Sequence record: OM319461.1
Strand: one strand, 5' to 3'
Length of the DNA: 64,000 bases
Shown here one piece after another: positions 4,400 to 18,400 of this stretch; the stretch's first letter is position 1; every line of letters starts with the position of its first letter. The notes beneath the pieces were generated by a model that was given only the letters and a program-made list of their open reading frames with translations, had not been told where the DNA came from and made no database searches. A program made the position numbers and the translations under genes.

Positions 4400-5128
4400 C
4401 TATGAGATAAGTATTTGCTCTACTTCTTCGATGTTTTCCGACGGGTTAACTAATGCAGAGTTAAAGCCCTGTGCCAGATAAGAACCAAGCAAACGCGTGG
4501 TTGTGTTATCGGCAACATAAGCAACGGAACGTAGAGCGATGCGGTCTACCTTCATTGCGTGGAAATCACTTTGCTTCTTATATAGTTCACGAGCCGGTTG
4601 TGTTCTATCTTGCGTCGCACGAGTTGTGGTAGCATTATAGATACGAAGAAGAGAGTAGTTTGTTTGTAGGTCAACGCCAGTAAACTCTTTGATTGAGTCA
4701 AGTAGCTTACATTGGTCGATGTTGTCCATGTATGGAGGAATTCGGTTTTTGGTAACGAACTCATCGTAAATCTCGAACGCCAGAGAAGAACGCTGAACAA
4801 GATTAAGGTTTGGACAAATCACGTCACCTTTTTCCCAAGTGAGTTCATAGTAATCTACTTGGTTGATTTTGGTGATCGTTGAACCTGCCGGAGTCAAAGG
4901 TATGATTGAACAGATAGAACATACGTCCCATGTCCCGTCTTCCAATACAACCACGAAGATAGCGACTGTATTAAAACGTTCATCAAGATTACCAAGCTTA
5001 CCACCTAGATAGCGCTTAGGAAAAAGAATTCTGATTTTTTCTTTAGCAATCCATTTATGATATTTTGTTTCTTCATGGATGGCCGCCATAACTTTATCGC
5101 GATTTCTTTTCTTTTGATCAAATTCCAT
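4400..5128 (-). CDS. phiKZ gp176-like virion protein (probable vRNAP beta-prime C-terminal subunit)
   Basis: Position between the protease and gp177/178-like genes. Motifs IRILFPKRYL and ALRSVAYVADNTTTRLLGSYLAQG. Confidence 0.7.
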   Translation of the reverse strand: MEFDQKKRNRDKVMAAIHEETKYHKWIAKEKIRILFPKRYLGGKLGNLDERFNTVAIFVVVLEDGTWDVCSICSIIPLTPAGSTITKINQVDYYELTWEKGDVICPNLNLVQRSSLAFEIYDEFVTKNRIPPYMDNIDQCKLLDSIKEFTGVDLQTNYSLLRIYNATTTRATQDRTQPARELYKKQSDFHAMKVDRIALRSVAYVADNTTTRLLGSYLAQGFNSALVNPSENIEEVEQILIS

Positions 5129-5182: not shown

Positions 5183-6673
5183 TTAACCTACAGAGACAGG
5201 AGTACTGAGCTCATTGCCAACGCTAAAAGGTTGGGTAATGGTTTGCTTAGCCATAAAGCGAGCAAGCAGACGTGCGATGCCAAACTCAAGAGCTTTTTGT
5301 AGTGATGCATCTTCGTTGCCGTCACGCTCTAGGTAGTTTTGCATTTCTGTGATTACCACTTCGGCATCAAGACCACGACCGATTGTTTTACATACAGCGC
5401 GTGTCACATAAGCTACGTCTGTTGTCAACTGATCTTTACGTGCATGGTTGAAGTACTCGCGTACAGCAGCAACATCATCGCGTAGTGATTCTTTTGCTGT
5501 TTCTGAGCGCTCTGCTTCTGAGTTAAGATGACGAACGATTGCACTTTCTGTGATGCGTTCGATTTGTGACTCTGAAACAGTACGTGAAATCACTGACGCT
5601 TTCTTCATTGCGAAGTTGTAACGATCAACAAGTTCTTTCGGATCTTTGATCTCGCCATTAAGAACATTTGTCGCAGTAGTGCCGTAAGCAACAAGAGCAC
5701 CGAGAACCAACTCTTTTGTATTCTCTTCAGCTTCGACCCATTTCATGTAACGAGCTTCGTCAGCATGAACGATCTTTTTGTTTTCAGTACCAAGGAATAC
5801 GCGTTCGTTCTTAGCTTCACGAGCAAGGTAATCCATGCGTTGGTTAACTGCCCATTGGTAAGAAGAAATAGCACCTGCTAGTTCAACACGCTCATTTGCA
5901 TCTAGTGCATCAGGCGATACTAGTGGATGGTTACCAGCACGAACACCACGCAAGAACATAAACGTCAATAGGTCACTGTGCTCTAGATAAGCAGACATCA
6001 AACCGATACGCTTTGGCTCTAGGAAGATAACGCCGCTTACTTCAAAGCCAGTGTCAACATAGCTCTTTTCGTTGCCCACGTACGCTTCGTTTGATTTAGT
6101 TACGAGAGCTGCAAGTTCAGTATTGATTTCAGCAGAAGGTGTCTTCATTGTTTCGATAAGCTGTGGAACAGTTAGATCAGAAACAAGTTTGCGAAGCAGT
6201 GAACCACCGATAGACTTTTTGCGTTGTTCACGAAGACTTGGGTTTTTAACTGCCTGCTCTAAATAAGAACTAGAGTAAACGTTTGGAAGACGATGTAACT
6301 GAACACCAAGACCTAAAGCATTTTGCTCTGCGATCTCAATACGAGCACGTGTAATTTCACTGCGGATTTCACGAACTAGAGGATTGATCTCTTCTTGAAT
6401 AAGACGTAGTGTTTTACGCTCAAGAACACTCTTCAAGTTGTGTGCAAGTACCGCTACTTCTTCACCGTGATCATGTGGGTTCAGAGCATGTGGAGCCGAG
6501 GCAGACATAATTGCATCAGCACCTTTGTTGCGGAATTCTGCTTCAGTAATGCCACTTAGAGTAGTCACAAGAGCCGCAAGCGGAGATGCTGGGATAGCAG
6601 AAAGAACTAAACCGCGTGCACTAGCATTGCCTGCAACTACCATGCCTTGGGCAGTACTATGTGAATTAAGCAT
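5183..6673 (-). CDS. phiKZ gp177-like virion head protein
   Basis: 496-aa helical protein in the conserved position between the gp176-like and gp178-like genes. Confidence 0.6.
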   Translation of the reverse strand: MLNSHSTAQGMVVAGNASARGLVLSAIPASPLAALVTTLSGITEAEFRNKGADAIMSASAPHALNPHDHGEEVAVLAHNLKSVLERKTLRLIQEEINPLVREIRSEITRARIEIAEQNALGLGVQLHRLPNVYSSSYLEQAVKNPSLREQRKKSIGGSLLRKLVSDLTVPQLIETMKTPSAEINTELAALVTKSNEAYVGNEKSYVDTGFEVSGVIFLEPKRIGLMSAYLEHSDLLTFMFLRGVRAGNHPLVSPDALDANERVELAGAISSYQWAVNQRMDYLAREAKNERVFLGTENKKIVHADEARYMKWVEAEENTKELVLGALVAYGTTATNVLNGEIKDPKELVDRYNFAMKKASVISRTVSESQIERITESAIVRHLNSEAERSETAKESLRDDVAAVREYFNHARKDQLTTDVAYVTRAVCKTIGRGLDAEVVITEMQNYLERDGNEDASLQKALEFGIARLLARFMAKQTITQPFSVGNELSTPVSVG

Positions 6674-6851
6674 TGTGTTCTCTCCGATTGATAAGTTCTT
6701 GGTTGTATTCAGCAGCAGCGATTTGTGCTACTGATTCCATATCGATCTTGCCAAGGTAGCCACCTTCCATCTTTTGCATGGTTTGGCACACAAGATCAAT
6801 AGCTGCAACAGCAACTGTTGCATTTTGTTTTCTTATTTGATCTGTTAACAT
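6666..6851 (-). CDS. Small hypothetical protein
   Basis: 61-aa ORF with GGAG SD; its stop overlaps the next gene start. Confidence 0.55.
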   Translation of the reverse strand: MLTDQIRKQNATVAVAAIDLVCQTMQKMEGGYLGKIDMESVAQIAAAEYNQELINRREHNA

Positions 6852-6949
6852 GTTAAACTCCAGTTTGTCCTTCTTTTGCCAATGCGCTTTTGGCTAGGAC
6901 GCTGATTTATAGAAAAGGGCGCGTACGCCCTATCCTATTTGTGCTGCTT

Positions 6950-8080
6950 TTACTTCTTTGGCCCGTTGACTAGGATGTCCATTGCCATTTCAGTAACGCG
7001 AATCATCGTGGTATTCACAGTACCTTGTTTGATAGGTGAACCTACGATACGGTCGTTTACGGAACGATAACCAAAGATAACATCTAGCTCTTTTCCGTCC
7101 ATGGTTTGGTTAACACCATCCAGTGTACCGCCTGGAACAGACTTGAGCTGGTTACCCATCGCATGTTTATCACCGATAGAGTGAGGCAGCAGGCTATCGA
7201 TAAAGATAGAGATTACCATCGTACCTTCGATTACTTTCTCACCACTTACGAAAGTAGCACGAGAGATCTGTCCGGTCTTGGCAATACGTCCACCCATTTC
7301 ACGAGCATGTTTTGCACGTCGTTTGTTATCGGCTTCAATGATTGTGCGTAGACTAGGACTGAAGTCTTCAAGCTTACCATTGTAAACAACTTCGATTCGC
7401 GTAATCTTACCTTGCTTACCAGCAGTCGGGTTAGAGCCAACTAGTTTATCAAGAGCAGCAAGAGAAGCATCTGTATTAGCAATGCCTTCTGTACCGCCTT
7501 CAAGAATACGACAAAGAATCGTATCGTCTTCTACATCAGTACCAACTTCTAACAAACCTTCGACTGATTGATCTGCACGAATCAAAAGACCTTTTTCTTT
7601 TGAAGTCCATGTACTAAGTTTCTTAGTAACACGTGGACCGATGCGAGAACCATCTTCTAGGGTATCATTGTTTTCCATTAGTGCCGTGCGGAACATTGCA
7701 CCAGTCTTCATAACTACGTTACGAGGACTAAAGAAGTCACGCTCAAAGAAGCCAACGTTCCATGCAAGAATGTCACCGGCTACAAATGTATCGCCAGCTT
7801 TCAAATCAGTTTCGAAGTGATGAGGAATAGCTTTACCTTCGGCCTTGCCGTGGATAATGCCAATCTCAAAACCTTTCGTAGAACCGTCTTTGTATTCTAG
7901 TTTCATGTAACGATCATCGATCTTCGCAATCTTGCCTTCCTGTTCCGCCTTAACAACATACAGTGAACCAAGACGCGATGCAACAACTGCATCATAACCA
8001 GTGCGACACGGCATTACGTCGTAGCCAATGGCAGGAGTAAATGCTGACATCTGAACTGACCCTAAATTCTGTCGCTTCGC
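6950..8080 (-). CDS. Virion RNA polymerase beta subunit (phiKZ gp178-like), exon 2
   Basis: Beta motifs ENNDTLEDG and GDKHAMGNQLKSV. Begins AKRQNLGSVQM directly after the intron terminal G at 8081. Confidence 0.9.
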   Translation of the reverse strand, partial: AKRQNLGSVQMSAFTPAIGYDVMPCRTGYDAVVASRLGSLYVVKAEQEGKIAKIDDRYMKLEYKDGSTKGFEIGIIHGKAEGKAIPHHFETDLKAGDTFVAGDILAWNVGFFERDFFSPRNVVMKTGAMFRTALMENNDTLEDGSRIGPRVTKKLSTWTSKEKGLLIRADQSVEGLLEVGTDVEDDTILCRILEGGTEGIANTDASLAALDKLVGSNPTAGKQGKITRIEVVYNGKLEDFSPSLRTIIEADNKRRAKHAREMGGRIAKTGQISRATFVSGEKVIEGTMVISIFIDSLLPHSIGDKHAMGNQLKSVPGGTLDGVNQTMDGKELDVIFGYRSVNDRIVGSPIKQGTVNTTMIRVTEMAMDILVNGPKK

Positions 8081-9519
8081 CAATATCTTCAGGAAGTTCG
8101 TTAAGCTTCCCCTGTTTATACAGCTCTGTCATTACAACAGAAAGTAACAGCGCGACTCACTGTTACGTTGAGACTATATCATACCTGCTTCACTATTACC
8201 GCTAACAGGTTCCTTCCGCTTCCATTTAAGGGATTCAATACCCACCCACTTGGGCCGTACTCTACTCGCTTCTTCATTGTGGTATTTCTCCACAAATCTG
8301 CTTTCGATAGTCGTTGAACTTTCCTCGTATCCGTAGACTTAGAGGCTTAGCTGCGCTAGGGACTTGATGTCCGATTTTCCCAGGTAAAGCATTCTTACGT
8401 TGTCTTCTCTATTTCTAGGAAGGATAGTAGCTTTACTTTTAACAGGAGGTTCCCGCAATTCAAAAGGATTTAAAGACGACCCGTGTTTTTTCTATCACTA
8501 TAAAAGCAATAGGTACAGTTGTCGAAAATTCTTTCACCCTTTGTTTTACATCTGTAGAACAAAGTAGTTTTATTTATTTCCAGGGTCTCATAAGCGTCCT
8601 TGGCCGTGAGAAAGATTGTCTCTTTGCCAATATCCATATTTTTGACTATGACCACTCTCTGTGATGTACAGCGCTCATAATCTTCATATGGATCTTCAAA
8701 AGTTCTCCAGTCTTCATCGCCGAGCTTAAATTGCAGTAGCTTGGTGGTGGTTAGCTGGTGACCTTTCTTTAGCCATTCGCTTATGTAGGTAGGAACAATA
8801 TCGAAAAAACTAGCAGCCTCGTTGATCTTGGAAAATTCAAAAATCTCTCCAGTCAAAACTTTCTTGACGCAGATCTTTTTGGTATTACCAGGAGTCATCG
8901 TTTTAGTATTCTCGGTCCATTTTGGTTTTTCTAAAACCAAAGAATATTGTTTCTGTTCTGGCCAGATAGTCCCTTCGGAAAACTGGACCCGATATTTTAT
9001 TGCCTCGTATGACATATCCAAGCATACTCCAGCTTCTTTGAGACTTGGATAAAAATCCACTTCCCCTGTTGAAGCGTCCCTAACTAAGACTGGCTTACAT
9101 TTGCTGCTTAACTTGTTAAGTCCAGCATGATGACAGTTTTGTTGTGGAGTAGCCCACTCTAGGTTGTCGAGGAAATCATCACCCTTTATTCCATTCTTGT
9201 GGTTAACATATTTTTCTTCTGGGTTGGCAATTGGCTTAAATGTCAAGCACATTAATCGATGTCTGCCGATAGTCATCGTATCGCCTTTGTCATTACGTAG
9301 ACGATAGTGACAATACCCAGCCGGGTTTATCGAACCACTAAGTTCCTTTGTGGTAATCGAACTGTAGACAGTGCCGTCTTCATCGATACCATAATCAGGA
9401 TATCCTGGAATCTGGAAATATTTTAAATTTTCTCTAAGTCTAATCATTTTTCAATGTCCCAAAATTATTACCATGTAATTAGGGGTATAAACTTAGTTTT
9501 TGTACAAGCACCCTTATTG
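8081..9519 (-). mobile_element. Group I intron (IA-like) in vRNAP beta, carrying an HNH endonuclease
   Basis: On the minus strand: P AAUUGCGGGAA (about 8450-8460), Q GCGCAGCUAAG, R GUUCAACGACUA, S GAUAUAGUC (8172-8180). The exon ends in U (GAU) and the intron ends in G. Splicing restores HHDD-AKRQN. Confidence 0.92.
8470..9447 (-). CDS. Intron-encoded HNH homing endonuclease (NUMOD4-HNH-NUMOD1 type)
   Basis: IPGYPDYGIDEDG, HRLMCLTF, VNHKNGIKGDDFLDNLEW and repeated C-terminal F.S..EA motifs. Confidence 0.9.
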   Translation of the reverse strand: MIRLRENLKYFQIPGYPDYGIDEDGTVYSSITTKELSGSINPAGYCHYRLRNDKGDTMTIGRHRLMCLTFKPIANPEEKYVNHKNGIKGDDFLDNLEWATPQQNCHHAGLNKLSSKCKPVLVRDASTGEVDFYPSLKEAGVCLDMSYEAIKYRVQFSEGTIWPEQKQYSLVLEKPKWTENTKTMTPGNTKKICVKKVLTGEIFEFSKINEAASFFDIVPTYISEWLKKGHQLTTTKLLQFKLGDEDWRTFEDPYEDYERCTSQRVVIVKNMDIGKETIFLTAKDAYETLEINKTTLFYRCKTKGERIFDNCTYCFYSDRKNTGRL

Positions 9520-12336
9520 ATCGTCATGGTGCATCGCAGGTAGCAATAGACCAGTGGTTGACAGTACAGAGGTAGCGCCATCACGTTCAAAGTCGAATGA
9601 ACCATGCATGCCACGTTGGTTGCGGATCTTCGTATTAGGCGGAGCAAAGGTACGGATACCTACTTTACCCGAGTCAGGTGTATCTGCCGAGAAACGACCA
9701 ACATCTTCTTTGTGGAAAACACGAGAAGACTTAACCAGAGTTTCTGCCGCACGACCACCTTCACCAGATAGTGAAACCGCTTCTAGTTGTTTAAGAGTAT
9801 GAACAGGGTTTAGTTCTTTAACTAGCTGACAAGTACTGTCAGAAGTAACCGCTGTCCAGACGTCACGAGGGCCAACATAAACCGGATGTAATGAAGGGTT
9901 AGGTTTGTTACGTTGTTCACGTACTGCCTTAACCATTGCCGAATAAACGAATCCAGGGATACGCTCTAGTCGACGCTCGCGCATGAAGTTAGGGTCTGTT
10001 TCATCTGGGAACTCATCGTTGGTAACCAGCTCAGAACAACGAACATACAGATCAAGAATGTCTGTTGGTTCTTTCATCTCTTCCAATACTTCTTTTGTAA
10101 TTGGGTCGACGAAAAGTTCTTCGATTAAATCGATTTCGTTCAGATGGTAGTTACCAAGACCAAGTGACTTGAAGATTGGTGTGTACGAATCACGTTTGTT
10201 TAGGTCACCCGCATTGAAGCCTTTGAGGATATCGTCAGCCACAGTAAAGCCAGCAATGATGAATTCAGCTGTCTTATTAGGGAACGTAAAGTGATAGCGG
10301 TAATCAGCAAACGTAATAGTAAACTCATTGTCTTTTGCCGTAGAGCGAACGTTAGATGGTTCGTTGCGGTATTTTACATTTAGCTTACGCAGAAGCTTTG
10401 TAAAGGACATAGAGTACGCCAGAAGAATACCGATAGGTACACGCTTGCCTTTTAGGTTCTTAAGCTCTGAGAACTCCTGAGGACGTTTGCCCCATCCACC
10501 ACCAATCGCTTCCATGAAGTCACCAACCGGTTCAGACTTCTTAGGTTGATGTCGATGCACGACGTCATTCATGTCAATCGTGAATGCCCAGTCTTTGTTC
10601 TTACCGATTAGGACATGACCATTCTTTTCATATTTCTTGATTGCGCCCTCGCCAAAGAACTCATCGCGATGGACATATTCAAAGTAATACGTAATACCTT
10701 TTGACTTGAATTCAGAAATGGTTTGCATTACAGCGGTATAAGCACGTGGCAATTGAATCTTCTTCGGAATATGGTTCTCACCAAAGCGGATGTTTTGAAC
10801 ACGACTATCGTCTGAAAGCAAACCAGCAGAACGAATGTTCTTTTCAACCCAGGCCGAGTAGTTGTACTTAACTAACTCAGAGCGCTGAATGAATAGCTTA
10901 CCAAAGTAAGAAGTCAACGCCGCACGATGTGGATGTGTCTTACGAATCGGTACGTCCACCTTTTGGCTATCAAGTGCGTATCTCACTCCGTCGGCCTTGA
11001 ATGTACCGTCTTCGTTTACATTGAATAGCTCGATTGGTAAGGTAGTAGACTTACCATTAACCGGCAGTAGCTTAACCTTCAGAGTCATCGCGTCATTCAA
11101 TGCATCGATTTTGTCTTCTTTCTTGATGTCTTGAATCATTACACCAGCAGCAGAGAAATGCTGTAACATATTCAAGATGTCTGCTTCATAGAGACCTGAC
11201 TTAACATAGTCGGCATAAAGAGAGTTAGTCGATGCATTCAACGCATGTGATGGAACCGACAATGGGTTAACAGAGGAAACAAGACGCTCTTTAACCTTTG
11301 TCATTTCCGGAGTAATCTTCGATGCTTCTTCGATGGACTTAGAAGTATCAAAGGGATTAGGCAATTGCTTTGTTCGTTGTTGAACATTGATCATTGCACG
11401 TGCTTGACTAGGAGTCAGTTTACCTGCTTCTGCTAGTGAAGATACTTTGCGAATAAGGCTATTTGGAGTGCCAGGAAGAATCTGTTCCTCGCTTGTGATA
11501 TCCGGGCCACTTGTATCTTCATCTGCCAATGCGTCATTATCACCGCCAGGACGCGTAGCAAGTGTCTTCTCAAACATGTCATAGATCTTAGTGACTTGTG
11601 ACTCACCGCGCTCTATGAGTTGTTGTGCTGATAATACAACACTGTTACGACCTTCGGTAATAACAAACCAAACACGCTTAGGCTCAACCAGCTTTAATAC
11701 TTCGGCCTTGCCTAGCATTAAGTTACGTAGTTCACGTAGCCAAAAGTGACCTGACTCAGTGAAGTCATCCATTAAGTCACGCGGTAGTCCATCTTCAGCC
11801 TTTTTGAAGTTAGCTTCGGTAGGCAGGTTTGAAGGGAACTTGATTGGGATGATGTGGTTACGCAGATAGGTCTGGTCGTTGACTTGTGCAACAATAGCAG
11901 TTGTTAGGTTACGCCATTCGTCATAGAAACGACCAACTGAGTTAGTGTAACGGAACATACGAGTAAGTAGACTATAGTCCACAACGGCCAGTTCTCTTTC
12001 GCGGGCAATTGCGCGATCGACTGTGCCGAAGTATTGCATCCCGCGTTGACTAGCACGATAAGCTTTAATTAGACTGCTGGTATTCGAGTTGATTTTCGAG
12101 TAGTTACCAAACTTACCATAACCTTCGGTACTAAAGGCAATTCGTGCGCTGCCTTCTTCTTTTTGTAGTAGGGGATGACTACCACGAATACCGATATCTG
12201 CTTGAGAGTCACTGATGTGGTGAATCAAAGCACCCAGCGGCAACTCAATTTCCCATGCATCAATAAGTCTCGGTGTAGATAAAGAAGCGCTGAGTCGATG
12301 CTCATACTTCTTTACAAATGATTCTAGTTGTAACAT
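9520..12336 (-). CDS. Virion RNA polymerase beta subunit (phiKZ gp178-like), exon 1
   Basis: Beta motifs SLSGEGGR and DTPDSGKVGI. Ends LPAMHHDD; spliced product is about 1315 aa. Confidence 0.9.
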
Positions 12337-12344
12337 TTTAATTC

Positions 12345-12512
12345 CTATTCGTTACCAGTCATAAATGACAGCACCCATTCGGAAACGTCATCGAATGATT
12401 TAACGGTTAGACCACCATTAGGAGATAGATAGTTTTTCCAGCTTCCCATTAGTTCGTCTACTTCTTGTACAGAGTCACGACTCCACACGTAGTTACATGA
12501 CAACATGTCCCC
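12345..12512 (-). CDS. Virion RNA polymerase beta-prime catalytic subunit (phiKZ gp180-like), exon 2 (55 aa, not in ORF track)
   Basis: Hand translation GDMLSCNYVWSRDSVQEVDELMGSWKNYLSPNGGLTVKSFDDVSEWVLSFMTGNE* completes GADFD-GD. Confidence 0.9.
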   Translation of the reverse strand, partial: GDMLSCNYVWSRDSVQEVDELMGSWKNYLSPNGGLTVKSFDDVSEWVLSFMTGNE

Positions 12513-13906
12513 CAACATGTTAGTTCGACTATATCATCACTCTAACCTTACTCACTTCTTCAGTGCTAATTAGAGGCTCCGCACTTCGCCGCCTGTGATA
12601 GGACTTACGCTACTCTACTCACTGCCCGAAGGCGCTTTCGATAGTCTGTGAACACTGACCGTATCTTGTCATCTCGACAATACTTAGGCCCATAGCTGCT
12701 GATACCCACTCTTTTGGTCACTTAGTGCTATTAACACATATGACAATAGAAATATCTTTTCTGTCTTTAGACGACCGTTGCCGCATATCCTTTCGGATTC
12801 CGTTTTGGTTATTTCTATAGTGTGTGACGTCCCAGCAATTCACGGAGTTTTATTTCGACAGGGATTTTTAGTATGTAACTATAAAATTTTTGTATTTGCC
12901 AGTTTTGGCTATGGCGGTTTTTACATTCGTGGTGGACCTTGATTTCCCACCAGTAAAAACGTAAAAGGCATAGAGACTAGGAAACGTAAACTCATTACCC
13001 TTCTCATCAATTGCCTTGACTACTTTTTTGTTTGACCTATCTTCTTTGGCTACTCTTTCTGGCGTCCAAATTTCCCATTCGGTAATGTCTTTTTTGTACT
13101 TGACTGAAAACGAACCAATTGGAAACTGGTCTTTTTCGCGTAGTCTTTTTCGCAGTACAACAGACGAAACTTTTAACTCTCGCTGAGCAGCGGACACAGA
13201 TTTAAATTCTAAAATTTTTCCTGTGTTAATGTCTCTCGCTAAAACAGAGTCAAAAACTTTTTTCCGTGGTAGTTCTTTTGCCGTTACGTACTTGGTGTCT
13301 TTTAATGTTTCAAAATCTCTGGGATCACAAACATATTTAAAGACATATTTGCCTTCTGGATCAACGTGTCCGTATTTTAACCAAGTTCTAAACTTAGTCG
13401 GTGGCCATTTGAAGAAGAGTGCAGCACGAGTAAGAGATTCAAAAATAAACTCTCGACCGTCTTCAAGTGATTTTATTTGTATGTCGATGGCGTCCTTATT
13501 GAGATCGGTCAAAATCGCATGGATATTGTTTTCTCGTTTGGTGAGCCATTCCAAATTTACACTTCTTGGGTCGGTTTTATCGCCATTGATGTGATTAACA
13601 ACCATTTCCTCGTGATTGGGTGGTGGATTGTTATGTGTCAATGCAATGAGTCTATGCAAACGAACTATGGCATAACCGCGCTTGTCATGTTTTATGCGAA
13701 GCACAGGATAACCAGCGTCATTTACGTAGGTTTTTAGTAAATTTCCAGTAGTCTTATTTTTTATGACGCCATCGGCGTCAATAACATAGCCAGTGTAGTC
13801 TGGTATTTCTTTGGCATTCATTCTATATCTTTTAACTCTTTGTTATAAGTCCATGTGACTAGACTCAACTATAAAGTTGTTAATAGATATGCTCGTCCCA
13901 GGTTAA
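12513..13906 (-). mobile_element. Group I intron inside the catalytic DFDGD motif of vRNAP beta-prime, carrying an HNH endonuclease
   Basis: On the minus strand: P AAUUGCUGGGA (about 12830-12840), Q AUCAGCAGCUAUG, R GUUCACAGACUA (12642-12653), S GAUAUAGUC (12527-12535). 5' exon ends in U; terminal G at 12513. Confidence 0.93.
12868..13821 (-). CDS. Intron-encoded HNH homing endonuclease with NUMOD1-like repeats
   Basis: IPDYTGYVIDADG, LHRLIALT, VNHINGDKTDPRSVNLEWLTKREN and FESLTRAA / FKSVSAAQ repeats. Confidence 0.9.
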   Translation of the reverse strand: MNAKEIPDYTGYVIDADGVIKNKTTGNLLKTYVNDAGYPVLRIKHDKRGYAIVRLHRLIALTHNNPPPNHEEMVVNHINGDKTDPRSVNLEWLTKRENNIHAILTDLNKDAIDIQIKSLEDGREFIFESLTRAALFFKWPPTKFRTWLKYGHVDPEGKYVFKYVCDPRDFETLKDTKYVTAKELPRKKVFDSVLARDINTGKILEFKSVSAAQRELKVSSVVLRKRLREKDQFPIGSFSVKYKKDITEWEIWTPERVAKEDRSNKKVVKAIDEKGNEFTFPSLYAFYVFTGGKSRSTTNVKTAIAKTGKYKNFIVTY

Positions 13907-15382
13907 ATCGAAATCAGCACCTAGGCCGGAGAGGAACGATGGATGAACTGCCATTGATTCGTAGAACGACATGCCTGGTTTCGGATATTCCAAAACCTCG
14001 TTGTCAGTTTCTGCCCAATTGTCATCTAGTTGTTTTAGACGATACCCCGTGTTCGTGGACTTGATGTAGATTTCACTCGGGTAGTTTGAGCCAAGACCAG
14101 TTACAGGATATCGTGTATTGAACACACGAACGTTAGGCATGATCTCCGCACAATGAAGATAGAACATTTCTACCCATGTCATCGGAGATACGTTTTCTTT
14201 CGGATAGCCTTCAGGTAACTCATCAATAGAGTTCATAACCTTGAAGTACTTGTCATCGCGATAGATAAGTTTGAGATAGTAGCCGTCAACCATAATAGGT
14301 TTGTGACGAGACTTCGCATTCTTAAAGCCGTTGATCAATTTTTCACGGCCTTGCTTAGTGCCCCATTTATCGCGCTGTTTTGGCGATACCACAGTATCTT
14401 CTGCTTTCCATGTGTCCCGATTGATAAGACTAACCGTTTGGTCAATGTTTTCAATAAAGTCAGCAAGGAAGCCTTTAGGCAATTTGTTCAATGCAAGAAT
14501 TGGTTCCACACCTTTCATGAATTGGAACAAGCCGTTGATCGTTGTACTCAAATCAGGTTGTCGTACGTCACCCAAAAACTCAGAACCGGTTTCCATCGAA
14601 GTAAGTACGTTACGAGTAGTACCAAATACACGACGAGAACCAAACTTACCAGATAGGAAGCCTTTCTTACCTGCTAGGATATTGATGATGTATTCTGAGA
14701 TGCCGTTGATAGCAATCTGAACCGAACGGCGCGGGCCATCAAATAGTGGGCTGTTCTTGTCATCCAGTCCAACTGGAATGGCATTCGTTGCAGAGATAGC
14801 TTTTCGGTACAGAGGACCGATCTCTTCTTCTACTGGGCGACCAGACGCTTCGTCGAACTGGACGTCACGAAGACCAGCCGGTAAAACAGGAAGAAAGTCT
14901 ACTAGTGCTACCGAACGATACTCTTCGAGTACTTCGATGCGGAGCTGACGTTCTTTTGACTCGCCTTGTTTAAATTCGAGTTCATTGAAGTGACTCAAGA
15001 AAAAGCTAAAGCCAGTTTGACCATCTAGGATGCCTTCTTTAGAACGAACGAAATCTTTTTCTTTTTCGTCCCATACGGCATATTCGCGACCTAGGATAAT
15101 GTCAGTATAAAGAGACTTAAGGCGCTTAAGTTCTTTAAAGTAAATTGGGTTGAATACAGGAACTTTCAAGTCAATGTAACTACGACGTTTGTCGCGTTGT
15201 GGTGTTCCTTGTTGACCAAAGATCAAGGTGGAATATAAACCATCTTGTTGAAAGTCTGAGGACAAGTGATCCATCGTAGACAAAGAACGAACTGGTAGTA
15301 ATGTTTTCAGTCGTCCTCTGCTATTATCCAACAGAGATATGTTGAATGGGATCTGTCTCAGTTTAAGAGACGCTTTTGGCAT
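13907..15382 (-). CDS. Virion RNA polymerase beta-prime catalytic subunit (phiKZ gp180-like), exon 1
   Basis: GLYSTLIFG, GKKGFLSGKFGSRRVFGTTRNV, RYPVTG and GLGADFD. Start MPKAS at 15382 with GGAG SD. Confidence 0.92.
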
Positions 15383-15448
15383 TGGTATAACTCCTGGTTT
15401 TCGAAGCGGCCAAATCAAATAGACCGTACACAATTAAAGGGGAATGTC

Positions 15449-18400
15449 GTGAGCGAATTCAATCTCGATGATGACGACCTAGATATGGACGACTTGTGGG
15501 ACGACGATTTCGGAATCGATGATATCGATGAAGATAAGCGCCAACCCATCGAAGCATTGTTTGACGGTGCTTTAGAGTCTGTCCTTGATCGTGACATGCA
15601 AGCCGATGTGGCTCGCATCGTTCTAGAAAACTCTTTGCCTGAGGGCTATGGTACCGCACTTACTTCAGTTCGCAATTTGACAAGAGATGCAACATCTCTA
15701 TACAATGACACGAAGAAGCAACTGAAAGGTCCATTTGATGCAATTCGAAAAGACTTGGCTCAGATGGCAGAAGAAAGCAAAAAAGAAACCTTTATGGGTT
15801 TCAAGATGGATTCCATCGCTAGCTTTCTAAGACCAGAAGACGAAGAGACTCGTTCTAATTTAACATCCCAGAATCCGCAAGACAACGCAGTCGATGCGGT
15901 ACTCAATTCCATCTTTACTCGTGAAAACGAAAAGAAAGAACAAGATGCCAAGTTACTTGAAACCGAACTCGTAGCAGGTAGACAAAATACAAACGCAGTT
16001 GTGGCTGAACTGAATCGACTTACGTCTTTCCAAGACTCGATTCAATACAACTACATGCGTAAGTCATTAGAACTACAGCAACGTATGTTCTTCGGTCAAC
16101 AAGAGCTTGTGGCTACAACAAAGGCTTTTGCTGCGGATAGCGTATCAAGCAATAAAGCTTTAATTAAGAATACCTCTTTGCCAGACTTTGCAAAACAAAC
16201 TCTGATGGAAGGCTATTCTGAAGAAGCACAGAATCGAATCTTTGGCAAGGTATCTGAAAAGGCAACTGACTACTTCCGTAATTTCGGAGGTAGACTACAA
16301 GAGAATATTCAAAACCGCTTGAATGAACTCGTGGGCAATGTAGTTGAGTTTGCCGAGGCAATCAGTGAAGCTACCGGTGCTATGAGTGGCATGGGTGATG
16401 AAATCAACCCAATGGAACTCGTTGGCGGCATGGGCGTCTCCATGACTGCCGAATTTGCCGGCGAGGCACTGGGGGATAAATTCCGTCGTGTACTTAACAA
16501 GTATCCGAAGATTGCCAAGTATGGACAAGAACTCGCGTTCTATGCTGAAAACTATCCATCCGAACTTCAGGAAGCTCTTGATAATTGGGATGGTGGTTTC
16601 CCAGAGGAGGTTGTTGAGAAGTTCCCATTCTTAGGCCGCATTCGTTCAGAAGCAATGGCAGATGAACTACGTGCGCTTATTCCGCGAATGGACGATATCT
16701 CTCTGGGTATCAACAACAACCTAGCCGGAGATGGTGCAACAAAAGAACGCTACTTCGACGAAATAACTCGTAAGTCTATTATTGAAATCATTCCTGGGTT
16801 CCTTTCTCGAATCCTTGAACAAACAATGATCTTTAATAATGGGCCTGGTGTTGAACGCGTGGTTTACGATGTAAATACCGAGACGTTTACGACTGAGAGC
16901 GAGGCAGCTCAAACTGCTCTCAAAATGATTCAGGGATCAGCAGGCAAGACAAAACGCGAACAAGAGTTGGAAGTAATGAAGCTCTTGAACGGTGGTCGTC
17001 CTATGGATCCTAAGGTCATCGATAGTCTCATTGGTACGATCAAAGAGTTTCGTGAAGCAGGTAAGGAAATCAATGCCTTTAGCATTGTCGACCATTTCTA
17101 CGACACCGGCAATGACCGCATGGGTAAACGTATTGACCAAGCCTTAACAAGAGCTTCGGAAGATACTGATGGTCAGAATGATATCATTGATCGTCTAGCC
17201 GCTGGTCAGGATTCCGGCCTTCGTAAGACAATGATTGCCAAAGACGCACTGCGTCGAATCAATCCTCGTGCAGATGCTGTTTCGAAAGAAGCATTGAATG
17301 CACTAGAGCTTTGGTTTACTGACAATGCACTTGAGTCAACTCGTCCTAAGTTCGAAGAGATGGCGGATGCATTTGCACGCCGTGGTTTTGGACCAGAGAT
17401 TGCCGAAGAAATCCAGAAGGTAGTCGACAGCTCAGAAAACAACCAACGTGAAAACGATCGTATCATTGCCAAGGCAGCTCGTGAGACAGGTGATGTTTTC
17501 CACGATATGCAAAATCAAATCAATCGTCTGTACGCAGCTGGTGCGTCTGATACGCTGCAATCAACTGGGATCATTACACGCAACCAGAATTTGCGTGGAC
17601 GAAATGAGATTCGCGATGACCTCATGTTCGGTGAACAGAAAACACCAGAACGAATGGACAACCCATTCGAAGAGATGCAGTCTGCTGGACGTCGCCCGAC
17701 AACAGCACAGCGCAGTGAGATGGACTATACTCCGTCAGGTGCAGCTACTGCTTTCGATTTTTGGAAAATGTTTACTGTTGTCCGTGACAAGGTCGAGGGT
17801 GTCCCGGTTCATGTCGTAAGTCAATTTGGTCGCACTCAACCAGAAGTGGATACTGGTGCACCTGTTGCTCCGACTGATGATGGTTGGCGCAATAACATGT
17901 TTGGTATGGTTGAACGTGGCTTTGTCACACAGGCTGAATTACTGAACATGATTCTGCAAAAAGACCTTACTGTGGAAGTACAAGCACCAGAAGGACTGAT
18001 GAGTAAAATCATCGGTGGTGGTTCTGCTGTTACTTCTGCCGGCTTGAATTTATTGAGCAGCTACACAACTGGCGTTTATAAGATGACAGCGGCTGGTATT
18101 GGTGCAGGCGGTAATATCATTGGTGGTGGCTTAAATGCAATGGGTGGTGCTCTAGGTATTCTGGGTGATCGCTTTAGACCACGCGATATTTATGTCGCAG
18201 GTAGCACCACTCCAGTTATCAACATCGGTGACCTTAAAGCAGGTCGCTTTATCGATGAAAACTCCGGCAAGCCAGTACGCAGTATAAAGGACATTACCGG
18301 TCGAGTAATCGATGCAGATGGTAATGAAATCATTTCTGCCGAAGATGCGTCCAAGAACCTTTATGATCGCCAAGGCACTAAGTTGTCTGCATTAACAAAC

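What the first reader, a model, noticed from the sequence alone, without database searches (positions are those of the whole stretch)
12345..13906. Group I intron splits the catalytic DFD|GD motif of the virion RNAP and hides a 55-codon exon
The ORF track ends the beta-prime subunit at GADFD-LTWDEHIY*, which lacks the third metal-binding Asp. Removing 12513-13906 (U at the 5' exon end, terminal G, full P/Q/R/S core) gives GADFDGDMLSC...MTGNE*, 547 aa. An active vRNAP therefore needs self-splicing. The vRNAP is packaged into virions, so failed splicing would be expected to give particles that cannot start early transcription (inference). Automated annotation would call this gene truncated.
Basis: partly seen in the sequence, partly recalled or inferred. 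Interest (0 to 1): 0.75.

Follow-up and report, generated by a model that had tools for sequence, protein, structure and literature searches.

The report
Self-splicing intron in phage polymerase gene
A mobile self-splicing (group I) intron that carries its own DNA-nicking enzyme sits in the catalytic centre of a giant Vibrio phage's virion RNA polymerase gene. It is real and unannotated, but it is one more example of a kind already known from phage phiKZ and its relatives.

Summary
The window is Vibrio phage C-ZP2022, and the gene is on the minus strand. The beta-prime-like ORF ends GADFD plus 8 read-through codons. A 1,394-nt insert (12513..13906) follows, then a 55-codon exon (12345..12512).

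Removing the insert gives a 547-aa protein with DFDGD. It aligns end to end with intron-less orthologues: in vB_VpaM_sm033 the two exon matches abut exactly.

The insert has these features:
- an I-HmuI-like HNH/NUMOD1 ORF;
- an RF00028 core (40.7 bits, E 1.6e-8, below the gathering score of 50);
- an internal guide that pairs with both exons (8-bp P1 with U.G, 5-bp P10).

Five metagenomic introns at the same DxD|GD site show compensatory changes in P1, P10, P3 and P7.

The protein is the orthologue of phiKZ gp180, a virion RNAP subunit. PhiKZ itself has a known intron (gp179) 6 nt upstream in the same motif. The window's neighbouring beta gene carries a second intron at the PhiPA3 gp210 site.

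Splicing itself could not be tested, because no RNA run was listed.

The side results are of moderate interest: three staggered insertion sites, with 44 of 120 homologue clusters interrupted in the motif.

The parts
13907..15382 (-). Exon 1 of the virion-RNAP beta-prime (N-terminal half, phiKZ gp180-like) gene; 492 codons ending ...LGADFD
   Evidence: ORF list. The GenBank CDS start maps to 15382. 34% identity and E 3e-92 to phiKZ gp180. PDB hit to the AR9 RNAP beta-prime subunit 7S00_d.
12513..13906 (-). Group I intron, 1,394 nt. It starts after the U at 13907 and ends with G at 12513.
   Evidence: RF00028 hit. Exon matches are contiguous in intron-less sm033 and BONAISHI. P1/P10 pairing.
13880..13906 (-). 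Start of the intron read in frame with exon 1: 8 codons (LTWDEHIY) and a TAA stop. This is what makes the annotated ORF look truncated.
12868..13821 (-). Intron ORF, 317 aa: an HNH_3 + NUMOD1 homing endonuclease of the I-HmuI type. It lies between the 5' splice site and the internal guide, that is, in the loop of P1.
   Evidence: Pfam HNH_3 at 38.4 bits (cut-off 24.8) and NUMOD1 at 23.3 bits (cut-off 22.8). PDB 1U3E I-HmuI at E 1e-4. Full-length 34% identity to the ORFs of the same-site introns L010 and L012.
12852..12864 (-). Internal guide sequence UCCCU-GUCGAAAU. Positions 12852..12859 pair with the last 8 nt of exon 1 (13907..13914; P1, with U.G at the splice site). Positions 12860..12864 pair with the first 5 nt of exon 2 (12508..12512; P10).
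   Evidence: Covaries with the exon sequence in L010, L011, L012, L014 and L015.
12513..12851 (-). Ribozyme core. P3 is 12841-12847/12577-12583; P4 is 12832-12837/12697-12702; P5 arm is 12703-12831; P6 stems are 12654-12696; P7 is 12641-12646/12527-12532; the P7.1/P7.2 region is 12584-12640; P8 is 12540-12575. No P2 and no P9 were found.
   Evidence: RF00028 alignment. Helix check. RNAalifold and manual pair tables with compensatory changes.
12502..12521 (-). Hairpin spanning the 3' splice site: the intron tail AACAUGU pairs with exon-2 ACAUGUU. The terminal G and the Gly codon are in the loop.
   Evidence: A matching, covarying hairpin is present in L012 and L014 but not in L010.
12345..12512 (-). 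Exon 2: 55 codons (GDMLSC...SFMTGNE) plus a stop. It supplies the third catalytic Asp of DFDGD. It is unannotated in C-ZP2022 and listed as a 'hypothetical protein' in vB_pir03.
   Evidence: tblastn finds it directly after exon 1 in sm033 (78% identity) and BONAISHI (52%). Alignment. Annotation.

Best explanation
The gene for the N-terminal half of the virion RNA polymerase beta-prime subunit (phiKZ gp180 orthologue) of Vibrio phage C-ZP2022 is interrupted by a mobile group I intron. The intron is subgroup-IA-like, with a P7.1/P7.2 insertion. It sits between the second and third codons of the metal-binding DFDGD motif.

Proposed mechanism:
1. In the pre-mRNA, the last 8 nt of exon 1 pair with a guide sequence that lies 1,047 nt downstream, just before P3. 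The whole HNH ORF therefore sits in the loop of P1.
2. A guanosine cofactor attacks after the U.G pair.
3. The adjoining 5 nt of the guide hold the start of exon 2 (P10).
4. Exon ligation after the terminal G restores one 547-aa reading frame containing DFDGD.
5. The I-HmuI-like HNH enzyme encoded in the intron probably nicks intron-less alleles of related phages during co-infection. This spreads the intron by gene conversion.

Shown here: the sequence anatomy, the covariation, the contiguity of the orthologues and the domain content. Inferred: splicing in vivo, endonuclease activity and target, and packaging of the protein into virions.
For: Boundaries:
- tblastn of exon 1 and exon 2 lands on adjacent bases in intron-less vB_VpaM_sm033 (147281|147282) and in BONAISHI.
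- The spliced protein aligns over its full length, with LGADFDGDMLSCNYVWS identical in sm033.

Ribozyme:
- RF00028 over the full model, E 1.6e-8.
- P1 has 8 bp with U.G, and P10 has 5 bp, both from one contiguous guide. The wobble-tolerant pattern is expected about once per window.

Covariation in five other DxD|GD-site introns:
- The guide reads GUCGAAAU, GUCGAAGU or GUCGUGG, matching exon ends AUUUCGAU, ACUUCGAU or CCACGAU.
- The middle pair of P10 follows the Gly-codon wobble base: G-C, U-A, A-U, C-G.
- Four P3 positions and two P7 positions change on both sides.
- ORF-less relatives have a P1 loop of 9 to 41 nt, against 1,030 to 1,083 nt in ORF-bearing ones.

Endonuclease: Pfam HNH_3 and NUMOD1 hits, and similarity to I-HmuI.

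Mobility:
- The intron is present or absent among orthologues.
- The intron and its flanks (10552..14449) are 99.5% identical between C-ZP2022 and vB_pir03, against an 86-90% genome background, with a sharp edge at 14450.

Necessity: there is only one copy of this gene in the genome, and the phage is a propagated isolate.

Identity: E 3e-92 to phiKZ gp180, no significant hit to gp55/71/73/74, and synteny with gp181-like and gp178-like genes.
Against: - No RNA evidence: no RNA run was listed.
- The RF00028 score is below Rfam's gathering threshold (40.7 against 50).
- The predicted folding energy of the core is no better than that of shuffled sequence (z +0.97).
- No P2 and no P9 were found, and the intron ends 14 nt after P7. 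This is unusual and might weaken autonomous splicing.
- Nanopore transcriptomics of phiKZ did not detect splicing of its homologous introns under the conditions used (PMC10914365).
- No intron-less DNA allele of this lineage was seen in four DNA runs.
Confidence: 0.88

Rival explanations
1. It is a group I intron at these boundaries, but it does not splice on its own. Lacking P2 and P9, it would need a phage or host protein (or the ribosome or its own ORF product) to fold and splice in vivo.
For: No P2 or P9 was found and the intron ends 14 nt after P7. The RF00028 score is below the gathering threshold. The MFE is not better than shuffles. PhiKZ long-read data did not detect spliced reads for the related introns.
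Against: The ORF-less relatives L011, L014 and L015 keep the same P1-P3 junction but do have P9-type hairpins, so the core is otherwise standard. Many small group I introns self-splice with few peripheral helices (general knowledge).
Confidence: 0.08
2. It is a decayed intron or plain insertion that no longer splices. The gene would then be broken or expressed as two polypeptides: exon 1 ending DFD plus 8 aa, and a 57-aa peptide from the ATG at 12518.
For: The annotated ORFs are separate. An ATG opens an ORF, MLGDMLSC..., at 12518.
Against: There are zero substitutions in the 382-nt core between C-ZP2022 and pir03. P1, P10, P3 and P7 are kept by compensatory changes in relatives. That ATG is not conserved in L010 or L012 and has no Shine-Dalgarno sequence. 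Breaking the Mg-binding loop in two would be expected to be inactivating. The gene is single-copy and the phage is viable.
Confidence: 0.03
3. The 3' splice site is 12 nt further on, after G12501, where the RF00028 alignment ends. This would give DFD|SCNYVW without GDML.
For: The Rfam alignment takes the hairpin 12502..12521 as P9 and ends at 12501. That junction is also in frame.
Against: It would delete the third catalytic Asp. All intron-less orthologues have GD plus two residues there. P10 pairs with GGGGA at 12508..12512, and the same P10 register covaries in L010, L012 and L014.
Confidence: 0.01

Closest known systems
phiKZ gp179 intron in gene 180 (virion RNAP beta-prime N-half)
   Same: Same gene, same catalytic motif and the same layout: 5' splice site, HNH ORF, guide sequence, core. 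Exon 2 has about 60 codons ending ...MTG. RF00028 scores 92.2 bits in phiKZ. The literature treats gp179 as an intron-encoded homing endonuclease (PMC11512511, PMC12676376).
   Different: PhiKZ (and Vibrio phage Yong XC31) are split at GAD|FDGD, 6 nt upstream. Their introns have P2 and P9/P9.1/P9.2. The HNH proteins share only about 25-32% identity over part of their length.
PhiPA3 gp210 intron in the virion RNAP beta gene (Birkholz et al. 2024, PMC11620839)
   Same: A group I intron with an HNH nicking endonuclease in a chimallivirus-type vRNAP gene, placed at invariant catalytic-site codons. Gp210 is among the most similar phage proteins to the window's HNH outside its sister phage vB_pir03 (27.8% identity over 90% of the query).
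   Different: It is in a different gene (beta, after HDD). That site is occupied in this window by a second intron (8081..9519), not by the one in the finding. Function was shown for gp210; nothing is shown here.
Bacillus phage SPO1 DNA-polymerase intron with I-HmuI
   Same: A phage group I intron encoding an HNH nicking homing endonuclease. I-HmuI (1U3E) is the only solved structure matched by the window's ORF.
   Different: Different host gene. Similarity is limited to the N-terminal 97 residues (E 1e-4).
Phage T4 td / nrdB / nrdD group IA2 introns
   Same: Subgroup IA-type core with extra helices between P7 and P3' (by recall; not tested against a subgroup model).
   Different: By recall, the T4 ORFs sit in P6 or P9 loops and encode GIY-YIG or HNH enzymes. 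Here the ORF is in the P1 loop, and P2 and P9 are missing.

Membership tests
Group I intron (Rfam RF00028) | 5' exon ends in U, which forms a U.G wobble with the internal guide in P1 | tested here: met
   AUUUCGAU (13914..13907) pairs with GUCGAAAU (12859..12852): 7 Watson-Crick pairs plus a terminal U.G. It covaries in five relatives.
Group I intron (Rfam RF00028) | Intron ends in G (omega-G), and P10 aligns the 3' exon on the same guide | tested here: met
   G at 12513. UCCCU (12864..12860) pairs with GGGGA (12512..12508). The middle pair is G-C, U-A, A-U or C-G in four introns.
Group I intron (Rfam RF00028) | Score at or above the curated gathering threshold of the covariance model | tested here: not met
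   40.7 bits against 50. The E-value is nevertheless 1.6e-8 and the match covers model positions 1-253. Same-site relatives score 27.9 to 46.7 bits. Yong XC31 (69.9 bits) and phiKZ (92.2 bits), which are split at the GAD| site 6 nt upstream, score higher.
Group I intron (Rfam RF00028) | Conserved core helices P3, P4, P6, P7 and P8, with the P3/P7 pseudoknot | tested here: met
   All were located. Both-sided compensatory changes were found in P3, P5, P6 and P7 across six introns, and a structurally conserved P8 hairpin.
Group I intron (Rfam RF00028) | Guanosine-dependent self-splicing | not testable with these tools
   No RNA run was listed. This needs a bench assay.
HNH (I-HmuI-like) homing endonuclease | HNH catalytic domain plus a NUMOD-type DNA-binding module | tested here: met
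   HNH_3 at 38.4 bits (cut-off 24.8) and NUMOD1 at 23.3 bits (cut-off 22.8). 1U3E at E 1e-4.
HNH (I-HmuI-like) homing endonuclease | Cleaves or nicks the intron-less allele near the insertion site | not testable with these tools
   Indirect evidence only: presence/absence among orthologues, and a 99.5%-identity tract around the introns against an 86-90% background.
phiKZ-type virion RNAP, beta-prime N-terminal subunit (gp180) | Orthology to gp180 rather than to the non-virion RNAP subunits | tested here: met
   blastp E 3e-92 to gp180, with no significant hit to gp55/71/73/74. The neighbours are a gp181-like M23 peptidase giant protein and a gp178-like beta gene, as in phiKZ.
phiKZ-type virion RNAP, beta-prime N-terminal subunit (gp180) | Complete DxDGD metal-binding motif | tested here: met
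   Met only after removal of 12513..13906.
phiKZ-type virion RNAP, beta-prime N-terminal subunit (gp180) | Protein present in the virion | not testable with these tools
   PhiKZ gp180 is annotated as a structural head protein. There are no proteomic data for C-ZP2022 or pir03.

The most novel reading that the evidence does not exclude
The 12 nt that encode DxDGD in the virion RNAP beta-prime gene may be a contested landing pad used by at least three distinct intron/HNH lineages at staggered positions: xxD|, DxD| and DxDGD|. About a third of known homologue clusters are occupied.

In these Vibrio phages the intron endonucleases, together with those in the adjacent beta gene, may act as interference weapons in co-infection, as PhiPA3 gp210 does. 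That could have driven the recent 3.9-kb gene-conversion tract shared by C-ZP2022 and vB_pir03.

The covarying hairpin that presents the 3' splice site in its loop may be a substitute for the missing P9.
Probability: 0.3. Interest if true: 0.6.

Novelty: new member of a known kind. Interest (0 to 1): 0.35.

Why it matters
1. Annotation. An essential virion polymerase subunit is recorded as truncated in both phage records, and its last exon is missing or called hypothetical. The same holds for many metagenomic relatives: 44 of the best 120 homologue clusters stop inside the motif.

2. Biology. Together with the second intron next door, at the exact PhiPA3 gp210 site, and a third intron in the sister phage, this locus extends the picture of vRNAP genes as an arena for intron-borne endonucleases beyond Pseudomonas phages. 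Vibrio jumbo phages are being considered for aquaculture therapy. Intron-plus/intron-minus pairs (C-ZP2022 or pir03 against sm033 or BONAISHI) would allow a test of interference competition in a second system.

3. RNA structure. This is a compact intron lineage with the ORF in the P1 loop, no P2, no P9, and a 3'-splice-site hairpin.

Tried and rejected
- The Rfam scan at gathering thresholds found nothing. The hit appears only at E-value thresholds.
- Thermodynamic stability of the core gave z +0.97, which is uninformative.
- The sigma-70 promoter and terminator scan of 12200..15600 gave nothing above chance.
- An IMG/VR search with the HNH protein and with a 30-nt guide-to-P4 DNA pattern found no relatives.
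- Distant blastn of the core against phage genomes found only a roughly 60-nt conserved stretch in EL-like and FishSpeaker phages.
- The RNA-run search listed none.
- Laying four DNA runs showed no joint, so no intron-less allele.
- A conventional guide near the intron's 5' end (GUUGAG within the first 85 nt; 6 bp, three of them wobble, no P10) was considered. It was rejected in favour of the 13-nt guide next to P3, which covaries in relatives (by eye).
- The PubMed Central copy of Ceyssens et al. 2014 was not held, so the claim that it reported the gp180 intron rests on PMC11512511.
- No custom covariance model was built, because the alignment exceeded the 400-column limit.

Full report
**Source and layout.**
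The window is Vibrio phage C-ZP2022 (OM319461.1, 100% identity). Its sister phage vB_pir03 is 96.2% identical over 12000..15600. The gene in the finding is on the minus strand.

ORF 13880..15433 ends ...GLGADFD followed by LTWDEHIY and a stop. ORF 12868..13821 encodes 317 aa. ORF 12345..12518 encodes MLGDMLSC...MTGNE. GenBank annotates the first as a 500-aa hypothetical protein starting at 15382 and the second as a putative endonuclease. It does not annotate the third. In vB_pir03 the third is a separate hypothetical protein. The pir03 genome paper never mentions an intron (PMC7765460).

**Checking the observation.**
In gene sense, exon 1 ends GATTTCGAT at 13907. The insert runs from 13906 to 12513 (1,394 nt) and ends ...ACATGTTG. 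The next bases, GGGGACATGTTG, read GDML. Joining 13907..15382 to 12345..12512 gives 547 aa with GADFDGDMLSC.

Rfam at its gathering thresholds reports nothing. At E-value thresholds, RF00028 matches 12501..12895 on the minus strand over the whole model. The score is 40.7 bits (gathering score 50), with E 1.6e-8 for the region and 6e-7 for the window. The alignment shows the P, Q, R and S elements.

**Boundaries from orthologues.**
tblastn of exon 1 finds 294 phage records. tblastn of the 55-aa exon 2 finds 14.

In vB_VpaM_sm033 the two matches abut exactly (145797..147281 and 147282..147446), inside one annotated 549-aa CDS. The same holds for BONAISHI, with a 555-aa CDS.

The spliced C-ZP2022 protein aligns end to end with both (73% and 52% identity). 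The stretch LGADFDGDMLSCNYVWS is identical in sm033.

**Ribozyme anatomy.**
The last 8 nt of exon 1 (AUUUCGAU, 13914..13907) are complementary to GUCGAAAU at 12859..12852, with U.G at the splice site. The 5 nt just upstream (UCCCU, 12864..12860) pair with the first 5 nt of exon 2 (GGGGA). Together these give P1 and P10 on one contiguous guide.

A fully wobble-tolerant version of this 13-nt pattern is expected about once per window on both strands. This copy sits exactly in the slot 4 nt before P3.

Because the guide lies 1,047 nt after the 5' splice site, the HNH ORF occupies the loop of P1. I found no P2. P3, P4, the P5 arm, the P6 stems, P7, a P7.1/P7.2 insertion and P8 were located. The intron ends only 14 nt after P7, so there is no P9.

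Instead, the intron tail AACAUGU pairs with exon-2 ACAUGUU (12502..12521). This places the terminal G and the Gly codon in the hairpin loop. Rfam mistook this hairpin for P9, which is why its alignment ends at 12501. Splicing there would be in frame but would delete GDML, including the third Asp. It is also contradicted by the orthologues and by P10.

Folding energy alone gives no support (z +0.97).

**Covariation from relatives.**
A search of the large protein collection with exon 1 listed 120 best clusters. After alignment:
- 76 are full length;
- 44 stop inside the motif: 27 after xxD (GAD), 8 after DxD, 8 after DxDGD and 1 after DxDG.

I fetched contigs for five other DxD| cases:
- L010 and L012 carry HNH ORFs;
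- L011, L014 and L015 are ORF-less introns of 387 to 455 nt.

All have RF00028-type cores (for L010-L012; motifs). In all six introns the guide lies just 5' of P3. It changes with the exon: GUCGAAAU with AUUUCGAU, GUCGAAGU with ACUUCGAU, and GUCGUGG with CCACGAU.

The middle pair of P10 tracks the wobble base of the Gly codon: C-ZP2022 G-C, L010 U-A, L012 A-U, L014 C-G.

P3 shows both-sided changes at four positions. P7 alternates between GACUAU/AUAGUC, GGCCAU/AUGGUC and GAUCAU/AUGAUC. P8 is a hairpin of unrelated sequence in each.

The P1 loop is 9, 24 and 41 nt in the ORF-less introns, against 1,030 to 1,083 nt in the ORF-bearing ones. This shows where the ORF was inserted.

The hairpin across the 3' splice site recurs with different sequence in L012 and L014, but not in L010.

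C-ZP2022, L010 and L012 form one lineage. The core is 72% identical to L010, and the HNH proteins are about 34% identical over their full length.

**The intron ORF.**
It has HNH_3 and NUMOD1 domains above the Pfam cut-offs. It matches I-HmuI (1U3E), the nicking endonuclease of the SPO1 DNA polymerase intron. Beyond vB_pir03, the phage matches are only about 25-30% identical, and PhiPA3 gp210 is among them (27.8%).

**Which polymerase.**
The spliced protein matches phiKZ gp180 (34% identity, E 3e-92) and has no significant hit to the non-virion RNAP subunits gp55, gp71, gp73 and gp74. The flanking genes correspond to phiKZ gp181 (a giant M23-peptidase protein) and gp178 (beta), in the same order and orientation. 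PhiKZ gp180 is annotated as a structural head protein. The tblastn search with exon 1 (E <= 1e-10) found only one copy of the gene in the C-ZP2022 genome. Virion packaging here is therefore an inference from orthology.

**What is already known.**
PhiKZ itself has the same arrangement. The gp180 ORF ends ...LGAD. Gp179 is an HNH protein. RF00028 scores 92.2 bits just downstream. An unannotated exon begins FDGDTVSF and ends ...YMTGEPKQRD.

The literature lists gp179 as an intron-encoded homing endonuclease and gp180 as intron-containing (PMC11512511; PMC12676376). One long-read study saw no spliced reads (PMC10914365).

Vibrio phage Yong XC31 is likewise split at GAD|FDGD (RF00028 69.9 bits). 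Raoultella phage VB_ZK_P1 is split after DFDGD. So there are three staggered sites within 12 nt. The C-ZP2022 site (DxD|GD) is 6 nt from each of the other two.

The functional precedent is PhiPA3 gp210, whose intron sits after HDD in the vRNAP beta gene and which nicks phiKZ gp178 (PMC11620839).

**Signs of mobility.**
Between C-ZP2022 and vB_pir03 the intron differs at 10 of 1,394 positions, none in the core. The tract 10552..14449 is about 99.5% identical, and divergence jumps to 11-20% from 14450 onward. The rest of the window is 86-90% identical. This fits recent recombination or gene conversion around the introns, but it does not prove homing by this endonuclease.

Four DNA runs showed no intron-less allele.

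**Mechanism and consequences.**
The best explanation is conventional group I splicing guided by P1 and P10, which is needed to make an active beta-prime subunit, plus HNH-mediated homing. Splicing, endonuclease activity and packaging are all inferred.

The outcome may therefore be few or no virions rather than inert ones.

**Verdict.**
This is a new, unannotated member of a known kind. Interest is modest for the intron itself. It is somewhat higher for the three-site hotspot, the compact architecture and the 3'-splice-site hairpin.

Noticed in passing
window 8081..9519 (-): A second group I intron (1,439 nt; RF00028 40.2 bits at 8151..8512; HNH ORF 8470..9447) splits the adjacent vRNAP beta gene at ...AMHHDD|AKRQNLG. 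Exon 1 ends at the residue aligned with phiKZ gp178 D1072, the insertion site of the PhiPA3 gp210 intron. vB_pir03 carries the intron-less allele, which fixes the boundaries at DNA level.
   Followed up: yes
L002 409..1953 (vB_pir03), inserted at about window 10957: vB_pir03 has a further intron of about 1.5 kb (RF00028 45.4 bits; 362-aa ORF annotated as a homing endonuclease in the pir03 paper) in the same beta gene. C-ZP2022 lacks it. The two sister phages therefore differ by two intron presence/absence polymorphisms within 3 kb.
   Followed up: partly
window 10552..14449, edge at 14450: A tract of about 99.5% identity to vB_pir03 is set in an 86-90% background, with a sharp boundary 543 nt upstream of the 5' splice site, inside exon 1. 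This looks like a recent recombination or co-conversion tract covering the intron-rich vRNAP region.
   Followed up: partly
window 12502..12521 (-); L012 about 6351..6366; L014 about 4505..4525: A hairpin is formed by the intron's last bases and exon-2 codons 2-4, with the terminal G and the Gly codon in the loop. The sequences differ but pairing is kept in three of the six same-site introns. Its role is unknown.
   Followed up: partly
window 13912 (run X3): A 743-nt contig nearly identical to exon 1 leaves the window sequence 6 nt before the 5' splice site and continues (gene sense) GGTGCTGAT-TAACCAATGCC... This looks as if a very close relative carried a different intron at the GAD| site. 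The same run also holds the window's HNH ORF.
   Followed up: no
L007 10158..10346 (-) (phiKZ NC_004629): The RefSeq record of phiKZ annotates gp180 as 490 aa ending GAD and leaves its second exon (FDGDTVSF...YMTGEPKQRD) unannotated, although the intron is mentioned in the literature.
   Followed up: partly
L004 5574..7061 (Yong XC31): The beta gene of Yong XC31 is also interrupted (RF00028 43.3 bits at 6698..7058; ORF 5974..6678, homologous to the pir03 beta-intron ORF at 44% identity).
   Followed up: no
protein clusters P0001-P0120: 44 of the 120 best homologue clusters of this subunit end inside the DxDGD motif (27 after xxD, 8 after DxD, 8 after DxDGD, 1 after DxDG). Public gene calls for this essential subunit are therefore often truncated.
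   Followed up: partly
window 12774..12809: A 36-nt piece of the P5 arm also occurs on other contigs in runs X3-X5. It is probably part of another intron of the same phages.
   Followed up: no
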